Part shown: positions 35,876-37,531 of the stretch, piece after piece
Layout: each line of letters opens with the position of its first letter
Numbering within the stretch: position 1 is the first letter of the stretch
From: Basidiobolus meristosporus CBS 931.73
Lineage: Eukaryota > Fungi > Basidiobolomycota
Assembly (NCBI GenBank): GCA_002104905.1
Contig: MCFE01000087.1
Span: 113,290 to 177,289, forward strand
Length of the DNA stretch: 64,000 bases
Direction: 5' to 3'
Program-made: the position numbers and the translations under genes
The notes under the pieces: generated by a model
What the model was told of the DNA's origin: nothing
The model's database searches: none
What the model saw: the letters and a program-made list of their open reading frames with translations, nothing else

Positions 35876-36145
35876 GTGGGCAGCAGGTGGGATCCTACCA
35901 AATCTAGCTTAGATTTGATATTCACCAGAACATTTGTAATTGCCCTACGCGCCATTACCCTCAAGATGGATGGTATTTTCCAAGCTGGGGAGATTCCCAT
36001 TTTGGGACTTGATTTTTCATCAATCCGCTCGATCTAGAGCCTCGGCAATCAAATAAAGTTCCTCAGCTTAGGGAAGAGCGGAGAAGTATAAATAGGAATG
36101 TGTCTAGGCTCCTCAACATTACTCGAAAATCGATCTACAATTAAC

Positions 36146-37249
36146 ATGTCTGCCGTTGAAAAGACCCTGTACGAGACCCTGGGTGGGGAAGAGACCATTT
36201 CCAAAGTGGTCGATGTGTTCTACAGCAAGTACGTCCTGAACGACGAAAGAATCAAGCATTTCTTCGTCGGCGTCGACATGGAGAAGCAGCGCGTCATGCA
36301 ATCCAAGTTCCTGTCATTCGCCTTCGGTGGCCCCGCCTTCAATGGAAAAAAGATGAACATCGCGCATCGCCATCTCAAGCTCACCGACGATCATTTCGAT
36401 GCGGTCATGGATGATCTCGGTAAGGCCCTACGCGACTTCGATGTTCCCGAGGAAATTATCGCCAAGGTGGCTGCAGTTGCGGAGACCACACGCAACGATG
36501 TCCTTGGTCGTTCCGAGAAAAACCCCGCTCCGAAGGAAATCCAAATGGACCACGTGGACCGCACCCTGCTCCATACCGATCCGGTTTATCGCTACAAGTA
36601 TGTTGCCAAGTTTGTTGATTTTTCCGACAAGGATGTCGAGGCTATCAAATCGGTGTCCGAGCAACTGGCTCCTCTCGGTGCAGTCCTGGTGGACGCGGTT
36701 TACGACAAACTCAGAGCCTTTGATATCACCTGGGAATCCATGGCCAAGCGCCACGAAGGGTATGCCGGGGAGGTGGTAGAGAACGTGCGCGATCTCAAGG
36801 TCGATAGCTCCCAGATTAAGTACCGAAAGGATATGCTGACCCGCTACATCGGCCGTCTTCTAACCAACCCGTACGACGAGAGAATGATCAAATACCTTGA
36901 CTGGGTCGCTAAGATCCATACCGACATCCCAGGAAAGAAGTCCAAAATCAACGTTGAGTACATCCATATCTCTGCGCTTCTTGGCTTCGTAGAAACCACC
37001 CTGATATGGGCGGTTAGCACTCTGAAGCTCGAGAGGGAGCACGAGCTTCAAGTGATTCTGGCCTTCAACAAGGTTCTTTGGCTTCAGAATGATTTCTTTG
37101 CTAAATACTACGCCAAAGATGGCTCCGACGTACCTGCATCCTTTGGTCTGCACGCACATCCAGCACCAGCGCCCAAATTTAACCTCAACAGCGCATTGGT
37201 CGGTGGGCTTGTAGCTGTTCTTGGATTATTGCTTGCTCAAAGATTCTGA
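36146..37249 (+). CDS. chimeric two-globin protein: group-I truncated haemoglobin + sensor/protoglobin-type globin + C-terminal hydrophobic anchor
   Basis: Domain 1: LYETLGG, VFY (B9-B10), HFF (CD1), Q..Q (E7/E11), FGGP, proximal AH. Domain 2: YVAKFVDFSDKD..LVDAVYDKL..YLDWVAKIH..WLQNDFF. Tail ALVGGLVAVLGLLLAQRF. No introns. Confidence 0.88.
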   Translation: MSAVEKTLYETLGGEETISKVVDVFYSKYVLNDERIKHFFVGVDMEKQRVMQSKFLSFAFGGPAFNGKKMNIAHRHLKLTDDHFDAVMDDLGKALRDFDVPEEIIAKVAAVAETTRNDVLGRSEKNPAPKEIQMDHVDRTLLHTDPVYRYKYVAKFVDFSDKDVEAIKSVSEQLAPLGAVLVDAVYDKLRAFDITWESMAKRHEGYAGEVVENVRDLKVDSSQIKYRKDMLTRYIGRLLTNPYDERMIKYLDWVAKIHTDIPGKKSKINVEYIHISALLGFVETTLIWAVSTLKLEREHELQVILAFNKVLWLQNDFFAKYYAKDGSDVPASFGLHAHPAPAPKFNLNSALVGGLVAVLGLLLAQRF

Positions 37250-37531
37250 ATTCCCGTCTTAGTCCAACCCTAATTACCATTTTAGTACATCATTGTGAAT
37301 AATCTACAGTAAATAAACCATTACGTTCTCCTGCGGATAATATGGGATTGTCAGTGATTTCCCACCATATTCCAACTCACCTATTCCAGGAAAGCCCAAT
37401 AGCAATTGTACGTGGGAAAGCGGAGACTGTTGGTAGGAAGGGCTGAGTTATCATTTGTGGCTTGGTTGAGATACCTGTTTATCTGTCAGTGACGAGTTGG
37501 TTGAAATCAAGGGGGAGGTAGTCTTCTCCTA

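What the first reader, a model, noticed from the sequence alone, without database searches (positions are those of the whole stretch)
36146..37249. Two unrelated globin folds fused in one tail-anchored protein
The N-terminal ~120 aa are a canonical group-I 2/2 truncated haemoglobin (Tyr B10, Phe CD1, Gln E7/E11, His F8, both Gly-Gly motifs), a class associated with NO dioxygenation and O2 handling. Residues ~134-325 form a 3/3 sensor/protoglobin-type globin like fungal single-domain sensor globins (e.g. Aspergillus FglA) with its own proximal His. A ~17-aa hydrophobic helix with a basic end follows, typical of a tail anchor. A membrane-tethered two-haem T+S globin could couple O2 sensing to NO detoxification or pass electrons between haems. 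I know of no functional characterisation of this architecture.
Basis: partly seen in the sequence, partly recalled or inferred. Interest (0 to 1): 0.8.

Follow-up and report, generated by a model that had tools for sequence, protein, structure and literature searches.

The report
Tail-anchored two-globin fusion of Basidiobolus
One uninterrupted gene of the gut fungus Basidiobolus meristosporus joins a truncated haemoglobin to a sensor-type globin and ends in a membrane-anchor helix; the combination was found only in this genus, the public annotation splits it into two genes, and its role (probably oxygen or nitric-oxide handling at a membrane) is untested.

Summary
Window 36146-37249 (+) is one intronless 367-codon ORF. 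Residues 7-117 match Bac_globin (group 1 truncated haemoglobin) and residues 149-326 match Protoglobin (sensor globin). All haem-pocket residues are present in both, and both folds are confirmed by modelling and Foldseek. A hydrophobic helix (347-364) lies 3 residues from the C-terminus.

The public record of B. meristosporus splits this ORF into two in-frame models. The first has no stop codon, so the split looks like an annotation artefact. Six fused copies in two Basidiobolus species keep the frame. Non-synonymous change in both globins is low (dN 0.03-0.08 in five of six copies) while synonymous sites are saturated. All copies share one TATA promoter upstream of the T start.

An exhaustive HMMER search of 1.84 billion representatives found no other T+S fusion.

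- The T domain belongs to an old fungal lineage shared with chytrids (Met at E10). It is not a recent bacterial transfer.
- The tail is not new to the fusion. Single-domain sensor globins of Mucorales and others carry it too.
- One paralogue has lost the T domain by a 291-nt in-frame deletion.

No RNA data were listed and function is inferred. The scan had already noted this architecture on another piece of this genome (s1-231418).

The parts
35996..36023 (+). Conserved upstream promoter block (CCnTTT...CTTGATTTTTCATC), about 125 nt before the ATG
   Evidence: Aligned in all 7 Basidiobolus copies, including the T-less paralogue. The binding factor is unknown.
36076..36096 (+). Conserved core promoter GGYGGAGAAGTATAWATA (TATA box at 36087-36094), about 55 nt before the ATG
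   Evidence: Present in all 7 copies directly upstream of the T-domain start codon.
36146..37249 (+). Whole coding sequence, 367 codons plus TGA, no intron
   Evidence: The frame is kept in 6 fused copies whose synonymous sites are saturated.
36146..36511 (+). T domain, residues 1-122: group 1 (N-type) 2/2 truncated haemoglobin. The His74 (F8) codon is at 36365-36367.
   Evidence: Pfam PF01152. PDB phmmer E 3.5e-26. AF2 with a deep alignment gives pLDDT 91.8. Foldseek target-normalised TM-score 0.84 to Tetrahymena trHbN. dN is 0.05-0.07 against four of the five other copies.
36512..36559 (+). Linker, residues 123-138: unstructured and variable
   Evidence: No secondary structure in the model. 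Fastest-evolving part, dN 0.16-0.53, with one-codon indels that keep the frame.
36560..37123 (+). S domain, residues 139-326: 3/3 sensor/protoglobin-type globin with a pre-A helix. Tyr186 is B10. The His258 (F8) codon is at 36917-36919.
   Evidence: Pfam PF11563 E 6.7e-37. pLDDT above 90. Foldseek target-normalised TM-score 0.89 to the AfGcHK globin, 0.84 to GsGCS, 0.83 to HemAT. Profile alignment to 2W31/2VEB.
37124..37183 (+). Spacer, residues 327-346: low-confidence, Pro/His-rich
   Evidence: pLDDT below 50 at 330-338. Variable among copies.
37184..37246 (+). Tail-anchor-like helix, residues 347-364, with small-xxx-small pattern (Ser349, Gly353, Gly354, Ala357 invariant), followed by the C-terminal QRF
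   Evidence: Hydropathy. AF2 helix 347-366 with pLDDT about 90. Invariant small residues. Homologous tails in Mucorales and other sensor globins.
37312..37317 (+). AATAAA, a possible polyadenylation signal 63 nt after the stop codon
   Evidence: Read from the sequence. This is a consensus match only and was not tested.

Best explanation
Shown: this is one intronless gene whose 367-aa product has four parts. They are a group 1 truncated haemoglobin (T), a flexible linker of about 16 residues, a sensor-family single-domain globin (S, the fungoglobin/protoglobin type), and a C-terminal hydrophobic helix placed as in tail-anchored proteins. Both globins keep complete haem pockets and are under strong purifying selection. 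The fusion arose within the Basidiobolus lineage. It joined an old fungal T1 globin (kin in chytrids, Met at E10) to the membrane-tailed sensor globin found in many early-diverging fungi. It then multiplied to at least 2 fused copies in B. meristosporus and 4 in B. ranarum, and lost T once.

Inferred: the protein sits on the cytosolic face of an internal membrane with both haem domains in the cytosol, probably as a dimer (S-family globins dimerise, and the tail has a GxxxG-like motif). The S domain supplies the ancestral low-oxygen, O2-binding role known for Aspergillus fungoglobin. The T domain adds local NO dioxygenation and O2/NO scavenging. Membrane tethering would put both haems next to membrane-bound reductants such as cytochrome b5 and its reductase, which could re-reduce the ferric haems.
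For: A continuous ORF with a conserved TATA promoter only upstream of the T start. Pfam, PDB sequence and Foldseek matches for both domains. Confident models: S domain pLDDT above 90, T domain 91.8 with a deep alignment. All canonical pocket residues are present. dN is 0.05-0.07 (T, five of six copies) and 0.03-0.08 (S) against saturated dS. A syntenic fused orthologue exists in B. ranarum. Met134 is Ile in 3 of 6 copies, so internal initiation is not conserved. No other T+S fusion was found among 1.84 billion representatives. The T clade is sister to chytrid T1 globins with support 99/91 and shares Met E10. The TM-like tail is shared with single-domain sensor globins of Mucorales, Umbelopsis, Irineochytrium, Zancudomyces and Plasmodiophora and is absent from bacterial kin. 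The closest named-context bacterial T relative lies between NorB and an FNR-type reductase on two contigs. Fungoglobin binds haem and O2 and is needed below 0.5% O2 (PMC11034785).
Against: No RNA run could be listed, so a single transcript is inferred and not seen. The public annotation has two models. A paralogue works without T. The syntenic B. ranarum copy has a fast-evolving T (dN 0.17-0.19) with Leu at E11 and Ser at E14, so T may be dispensable. Haem binding, membrane insertion, the target organelle and any NO chemistry are untested. pTM is 0.62 and the linker is disordered, so no defined T-S interface is predicted.
Confidence: 0.6

Rival explanations
1. The public annotation is right: two neighbouring genes produce a separate 122-aa truncated haemoglobin and a separate 234-aa sensor globin.
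For: GCA_002104905.1 contig MCFE01000087.1 carries two models at exactly these places. Met134 could serve as a start in this copy.
Against: The model ends coincide with where bacterial trHbN templates end and where Mucoromycota sensor globins start, as expected of homology-templated models. Five other copies are annotated as fused. Met134 is Ile in three copies. No conserved promoter lies in front of S, while the TATA lies in front of T, even in the T-less copy. The linker keeps its frame despite saturated dS.
Confidence: 0.05
2. The protein is functionally just a tail-anchored sensor globin, and the T domain is a passenger on its way to loss.
For: One B. meristosporus paralogue lost T through a 291-nt in-frame deletion and kept promoter, S domain and tail. 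The T domain of B. ranarum P0005 evolves about 3 times faster and has altered distal residues.
Against: In five of six copies, this one included, T has dN 0.05-0.07 with omega about 0.03-0.07 where dS could be estimated. That is as constrained as S, across divergences at which synonymous sites are saturated. Every pocket residue is intact.
Confidence: 0.15
3. The two haems form a coupled device. Ligand or redox state of the S haem gates the T haem, or passes electrons to it, giving a reductase-independent switchable NO dioxygenase.
For: Covalent linkage has been maintained in six copies. The S family is built for ligand-dependent conformational signalling in globin-coupled sensors (established knowledge).
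Against: The linker is disordered, variable in length and the fastest-evolving segment. pTM of 0.62 gives no confident interface. The T domain is attached N-terminally, not at the C-terminal end used by the transmitter domains of globin-coupled sensors.
Confidence: 0.15
4. The C-terminal helix is not a membrane anchor but a hydrophobic oligomerisation or lipid-droplet/amphipathic element, and the protein is soluble or only peripheral.
For: The hydrophobic core is short (15-18 residues) and Gly/Ala-rich. Mortierellomycota relatives carry a non-TM amphipathic end, GFFSRLWSLFF, in its place.
Against: Kyte-Doolittle 1.93 over 19 residues, above the usual 1.6 cut-off. The segment has no charged residue. 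A basic end follows within 3 residues of the terminus. The same design recurs in many lineages.
Confidence: 0.1

Closest known systems
Group 1 (N-type) truncated haemoglobins, e.g. Synechocystis GlbN, Tetrahymena trHbN, M. tuberculosis HbN, Chlamydomonas THB1; chytrid T1 globins
   Same: The 2/2 fold, the Gly-Gly hinges, and Phe B9, Tyr B10, Phe CD1, Gln E7, Gln E11 and His F8. Identity is 49% to GlbN and 42% to Tetrahymena trHbN. The nearest clade contains the chytrids Homolaphlyctis and Synchytrium.
   Different: E10 is Met, not the His (GlbN) or Lys (THB1) that gives six-coordination, and there is no His117-type covalent haem link. The domain is fused to another globin and to a membrane tail.
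Fungal sensor single-domain globins (Sgb/SSDgb), including Aspergillus fumigatus fungoglobin FglA
   Same: A Protoglobin-family 3/3 globin with Tyr B10 and His F8. Identity is 55-62% to Mortierellomycota and Mucorales single-domain members, and the C-terminal hydrophobic tail with a basic end is shared with Mucorales and others.
   Different: It carries an extra N-terminal truncated haemoglobin.
Multi-unit and chimeric truncated haemoglobins (tandem T-T...T proteins of protists and algae; Hade et al. 2017, cited in PMC7475203)
   Same: More than one globin unit in one polypeptide. Such proteins were the next-best hits (Lacrimia 12 x T, Astrephomene 5 x T, Gallionella 2 x T).
   Different: Those repeat one family (T only, or S only as in the Cyanophora 4 x S protein). 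This one joins two different globin families.
Globin-coupled sensors (HemAT, AfGcHK, GsGCS) and flavohaemoglobin
   Same: The S domain superposes on GCS globin domains (target-normalised TM-score 0.83-0.89). Like flavohaemoglobin, it is a chimeric globin plausibly tied to NO/O2 chemistry.
   Different: There is no transmitter domain after the globin and no FAD/NAD reductase domain. The partner is a second globin placed N-terminally.
Membrane-bound globins (acylated globin X; the TM-containing Geobacter GCS, PMC8076648)
   Same: A globin held at a membrane.
   Different: Tethering here would be through a single C-terminal tail-anchor helix, not N-terminal acylation or a multi-helix membrane domain.

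Membership tests
Group 1 truncated haemoglobin (T1/N, Pfam PF01152) | Profile match above the curated threshold | tested here: met
   60.3 bits against a cut-off of 21, residues 7-117. PDB relatives to E 3.5e-26.
Group 1 truncated haemoglobin (T1/N, Pfam PF01152) | 2-on-2 helical fold | tested here: met
   AF2 pLDDT 91.8, pTM 0.83. Foldseek target-normalised TM-score 0.84, rmsd 2.3 to 3AQ5.
Group 1 truncated haemoglobin (T1/N, Pfam PF01152) | Gly-Gly hinges, Phe B9-Tyr B10, Phe CD1, Gln E7/E11, His F8 | tested here: met
   G13-G14, G61-G62, F25, Y26, F40, Q48, Q52, H74.
Group 1 truncated haemoglobin (T1/N, Pfam PF01152) | Binds haem b and O2/NO | not testable with these tools
   Needs recombinant protein.
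Sensor-family single-domain globin / protoglobin (Pfam PF11563) | Profile match above the curated threshold | tested here: met
   127.3 bits against a cut-off of 25, residues 149-326.
Sensor-family single-domain globin / protoglobin (Pfam PF11563) | 3-on-3 fold with a pre-A helix, as in GCS globin domains and protoglobin | tested here: met
   pLDDT above 90 over 139-322. Target-normalised TM-score 0.89 to 5OHE, 0.84 to 2W31, 0.83 to 1OR4, 0.73-0.77 to protoglobin.
Sensor-family single-domain globin / protoglobin (Pfam PF11563) | Proximal His F8 and Tyr B10 | tested here: met
   His258 and Tyr186 are invariant in 35 relatives and aligned to F8/B10 of 2W31 and 2VEB.
Sensor-family single-domain globin / protoglobin (Pfam PF11563) | Binds haem and O2 (as shown for fungoglobin) | not testable with these tools
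   Known only for A. fumigatus FglA, by citation.
Tail-anchored membrane protein | A single hydrophobic helix within about 30 residues of the C-terminus with a very short luminal end | tested here: met
   Helix 347-364, 3 residues to the end. No other segment reaches the same hydropathy (next best 1.61 inside the S domain).
Tail-anchored membrane protein | No N-terminal signal peptide or other TM segment | tested here: met
   The N-terminus is the hydrophilic start of the T globin.
Tail-anchored membrane protein | Post-translational insertion, and which organelle | not testable with these tools
   Localisation experiment needed.
Globin-coupled sensor | A transmitter/output domain C-terminal to the globin | tested here: not met
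   Only a 20-residue spacer and the tail follow the globin.
Flavohaemoglobin | A fused FAD/NAD(P)H reductase domain | tested here: not met
   No such Pfam match.

The most novel reading that the evidence does not exclude
Early-diverging fungi possess an unrecognised class of tail-anchored, cytosol-facing sensor globins. In Basidiobolus this scaffold captured an ancient fungal truncated haemoglobin to make a membrane-bound two-haem enzyme. In that enzyme the two haems would cooperate (S gating or feeding T), drawing electrons from membrane cytochrome b5 and its reductase. This would be a reductase-less, membrane-localised alternative to flavohaemoglobin for NO detoxification in a hypoxic gut habitat.
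Probability: 0.2. Interest if true: 0.75.

Novelty: new variant of a known kind. Interest (0 to 1): 0.55.

Why it matters
Globins from different families are almost never found in one chain. The chimeras described so far pair a globin with a reductase or a signalling domain, or repeat one family. A natural T+S fusion under strong selection is a ready-made system for asking whether two haem pockets with different ligand chemistry cooperate. It also raises the question of why sensor globins of early-diverging fungi are membrane-tethered, which does not seem to have been described. It corrects a public annotation that hides the fusion. Basidiobolus lives in animal guts and can infect people, so its hypoxia and NO defences are of some applied interest. 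The practical weight is limited until haem content, localisation and activity are measured.

Tried and rejected
1. RNA evidence: the look-up of sequencing runs listed no run, so read laying was not used and the one-transcript question rests on comparative evidence.
2. Recent bacterial HGT origin of the T domain. I suspected it because the best named hits were Steroidobacteraceae at 56-57%. I rejected it because the tree places Basidiobolus T next to the chytrids Homolaphlyctis and Synchytrium (99/91), and they share Met E10.
3. Gallionella P0050, flagged with both Pfam families, is a tandem T-T protein. The precomputed or cumulative 'Protoglobin' hits on T repeats have zero significant stretches and are artefacts.
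4. The high-scoring long proteins from the HMMER search are multi-T or multi-S, not T+S.
5. Alignment A3, which mixed T-only and S-only sequences, put T globins onto the S domain and was discarded. Structures were predicted from A4 and A8 instead.
6. Direct phmmer of the whole protein did not reach solved sensor globins. A profile of 35 relatives reached them only weakly (E 0.008), and Foldseek settled the fold.
7. Haem-haem distance could not be measured, because the tools return no coordinates and no haem.
8. NCBIfam gave no match.
9. Whether Basidiobolus has a flavohaemoglobin was not tested, as no query sequence was available by reference.

Full report
**What is there.** Window 36146-37249 (+) is a single uninterrupted ORF of 367 codons ending in TGA. 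A longer ORF from an ATG at 36098 is unlikely to be used. A TATA box (36087-36094) lies only a few bases upstream of that ATG, and all relatives start with the same MS(A/T/V)(V/I)E.

Pfam gives two independent, strong matches:
- Bac_globin PF01152 at residues 7-117 (E 2.6e-16).
- Protoglobin PF11563 at residues 149-326 (E 6.7e-37).

NCBIfam has nothing.

**The T domain.**
- It matches solved group 1 truncated haemoglobins: Synechocystis GlbN E 3.5e-26, Tetrahymena trHbN 3.7e-25, Chlamydomonas THB1, and M. tuberculosis HbN.
- By alignment to GlbN and 50 relatives, the diagnostic residues are all present: Gly13-Gly14, Phe25 (B9), Tyr26 (B10), Phe40 (CD1), Gln48 (E7), Gln52 (E11), Gly61-Gly62, His74 (F8).
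- E10 is Met51, not the His of cyanobacterial GlbN or the Lys of most bacterial kin. The His117-type covalent haem link of GlbN is absent.
- In the full-length model the T domain has moderate confidence, because that alignment was shallow for T. Folded with 51 sequences, it reaches pLDDT 91.8 and pTM 0.83.
- Foldseek superposes it on Tetrahymena trHbN with target-normalised TM-score 0.84.

**The S domain.**
- Residues 139-322 are modelled at pLDDT above 90.
- Target-normalised TM-scores are 0.89 to the globin domain of AfGcHK, 0.84 to GsGCS, 0.83 to HemAT and 0.73-0.77 to M. acetivorans protoglobin.
- In 35 relatives, Tyr186 and His258 are invariant.
- A profile of these relatives aligns His258 with the proximal His of 2W31 and of protoglobin, and Tyr186 with Tyr B10 of protoglobin.

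So the second domain scores as a globin and has the haem ligand. Actual haem binding cannot be tested here.

**The tail.**
- The strongest hydrophobic window of the protein is 350-364 (Kyte-Doolittle 2.64 over 15 residues, 1.93 over 19). It is followed by QRF and the stop.
- AF2 models helix 347-366 at pLDDT about 90.
- Ser349, Gly353, Gly354 and Ala357 are invariant among the copies, a small-xxx-small pattern.
- The tail is not an invention of the fusion. Single-domain sensor globins of Mucorales and Umbelopsis, and also of Irineochytrium, Zancudomyces and Plasmodiophora, end in the same kind of Gly/Ala-rich hydrophobic helix with a basic end.
- Mortierellomycota have a different short amphipathic end, and bacterial (planctomycete-like) relatives have none.
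- I found no paper describing tail-anchored globins.

**One gene or two?** The public assembly GCA_002104905.1 (B. meristosporus CBS 931.73, contig MCFE01000087.1) carries two adjacent models here. One covers 122 codons and the other 234 codons, with 33 nt between them and both in the same frame. It ends exactly where bacterial trHbN sequences end, and the second starts exactly where Mucoromycota sensor globins start. That is what homology-templated gene models would give; this step is inference.

Evidence for one protein:
- Five other loci (one in B. meristosporus, four in B. ranarum) are annotated as 365-371-aa fusions.
- One of these, P0005, is the syntenic orthologue, with the same ABC transporter, E1 dehydrogenase and phytochelatin-synthase-like neighbours.
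- Pairwise dN is 0.05-0.07 in T for five of the six copies and 0.03-0.08 in S, while dS is saturated (above 1, or not computable). The linker and tail evolve faster but keep the frame.
- Met134 is Ile in three copies.
- The only conserved promoter elements lie upstream of the T start, in all seven copies: a GGYGGAGAAGTATAWATA box about 55 nt before the ATG and a CTTGATTTTTCATC block about 125 nt before it.

Since T has no stop and is clearly under protein-level selection, its translation must run on into S. Direct RNA evidence is missing because no sequencing run was listed.

**Distribution.**
- The word-based search of 5.8 billion clusters found full-length matches only in Basidiobolus.
- The exhaustive HMMER search of 1.84 billion representatives gave a single full-length, single-stretch hit, the Basidiobolus cluster.
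- The other high scorers are multi-T proteins (Lacrimia 12 units, Astrephomene 5), a multi-S protein (Cyanophora 4 units) or S fused to unrelated domains. None is T+S.
- A Gallionella protein flagged with both Pfam families is a T-T tandem.
- Library searches found no description of a T+S fusion or of Basidiobolus globins.

**Origin.** I first suspected a recent bacterial transfer of T, because the best named hits were Steroidobacteraceae at 56-57%. A maximum-likelihood tree of 70 T domains rejects that. The Basidiobolus clade (100/99) is sister (99/91) to a group holding Homolaphlyctis polyrhiza and Synchytrium endobioticum, both chytrids, plus unnamed metagenome sequences. This group shares Met at E10, whereas the proteobacterial-type kin have Lys and cyanobacteria have His. 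T1 globins were known in fungi only from a chytrid and a blastocladiomycete (PMC3287990). The alignment has only 125 columns, so deep branches are weak. The S part is 55-62% identical to Mortierellomycota and Mucorales sensor globins. The simplest history is that a resident fungal T1 globin gene fused to a resident tail-anchored sensor globin in the Basidiobolus lineage, followed by duplication.

**Secondary loss.** The B. meristosporus paralogue P0007 keeps the promoter, the MSAVE start, the linker, S and the tail. It lacks 291 nt, roughly codons 5-101 of T, in frame. The T domain of B. ranarum P0005 evolves about three times faster and has Ile E10, Leu E11 and Ser E14. T is therefore an accessory module that some copies are shedding or remodelling. 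In this window's copy it is fully intact.

**How it probably works.** What is shown is the architecture, the intact pockets, the selection and the tail. What follows is inferred. The protein would be a cytosol-facing, tail-anchored, probably dimeric two-haem protein.
- The S domain would carry the ancestral role of this fungal family. The one characterised fungal relative, fungoglobin FglA, binds haem and O2 and is needed for growth below 0.5% O2 (PMC11034785 citing Hillmann 2014).
- The T domain has the Tyr B10 / Gln E7 / Gln E11 pocket typical of NO-dioxygenating trHbN. A close bacterial relative sits between NorB and an FNR-type reductase on two metagenome contigs.
- Tethering may place the haems next to membrane-bound cytochrome b5 and its reductase. 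This rests on my own knowledge of globin reduction systems and was not tested.
- A fixed haem-haem relay is not supported: the linker is disordered, variable in length and the fastest-evolving segment, and pTM is 0.62.
- The target membrane cannot be assigned.

**Verdict.** It is a new variant of a known kind: a cross-family globin-globin fusion, restricted to one genus, sitting on a widespread but apparently undescribed tail-anchored sensor-globin scaffold. Function is unproven.

Noticed in passing
window 36146-36511 and 36545-37249 (L010 2501-2866 and 2900-3604): The public B. meristosporus annotation splits this ORF into two in-frame gene models. The first has no stop codon, so the fusion is hidden in that record.
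   Followed up: yes
L001 2893-3705 (B. meristosporus contig MCFE01000539.1): This paralogue lost the T domain through a single 291-nt in-frame deletion but keeps the same promoter, start codon, linker, S domain and tail. It lies between two tandem nucleoside-transporter genes.
   Followed up: yes
window 35996-36023 and 36076-36096; same positions in L001-L006: Two promoter blocks are conserved in all seven copies. The upstream block contains an imperfect inverted repeat, TTGAT-N5-ATCAA. No known factor was assigned.
   Followed up: partly
P0032-P0067, P0068, P0081, P0083 (C-termini): Single-domain sensor globins of Mucorales, Umbelopsis, a chytrid, Zancudomyces and Plasmodiophora end in a Gly/Ala-rich TM-like helix with a basic end. 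Mortierellomycota have GFFSRLWSLFF instead, and bacterial kin have no tail. Membrane-tethered fungal sensor globins seem undescribed in the papers searched.
   Followed up: partly
L008 888-4964 and L009 3277-7353 (metagenome contigs): A bacterial trHbN 56% identical to the T domain sits in a conserved NorB - SirB - trHbN - Fer2/FAD/NAD reductase cluster, a likely NO-detoxification operon.
   Followed up: no
P0131 (789 aa), P0068 (613 aa), P0108 (2207 aa), P0107 (1882 aa): Other unusual globin chimeras turned up: MoCF_biosynth + MoeA_N + Protoglobin; Asparaginase_2 + Protoglobin + TM tail (Irineochytrium); four Protoglobin units (Cyanophora); twelve truncated-haemoglobin units (Lacrimia).
   Followed up: no
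L007 3001-3397 (B. ranarum contig JASJQH010000970.1): A 111-aa 'single-domain' truncated haemoglobin of B. ranarum (P0256) is a gene model cut by the contig end. It lies beside the same ABC transporter, so it is probably an allele or duplicate of the P0005 fusion locus.
   Followed up: partly
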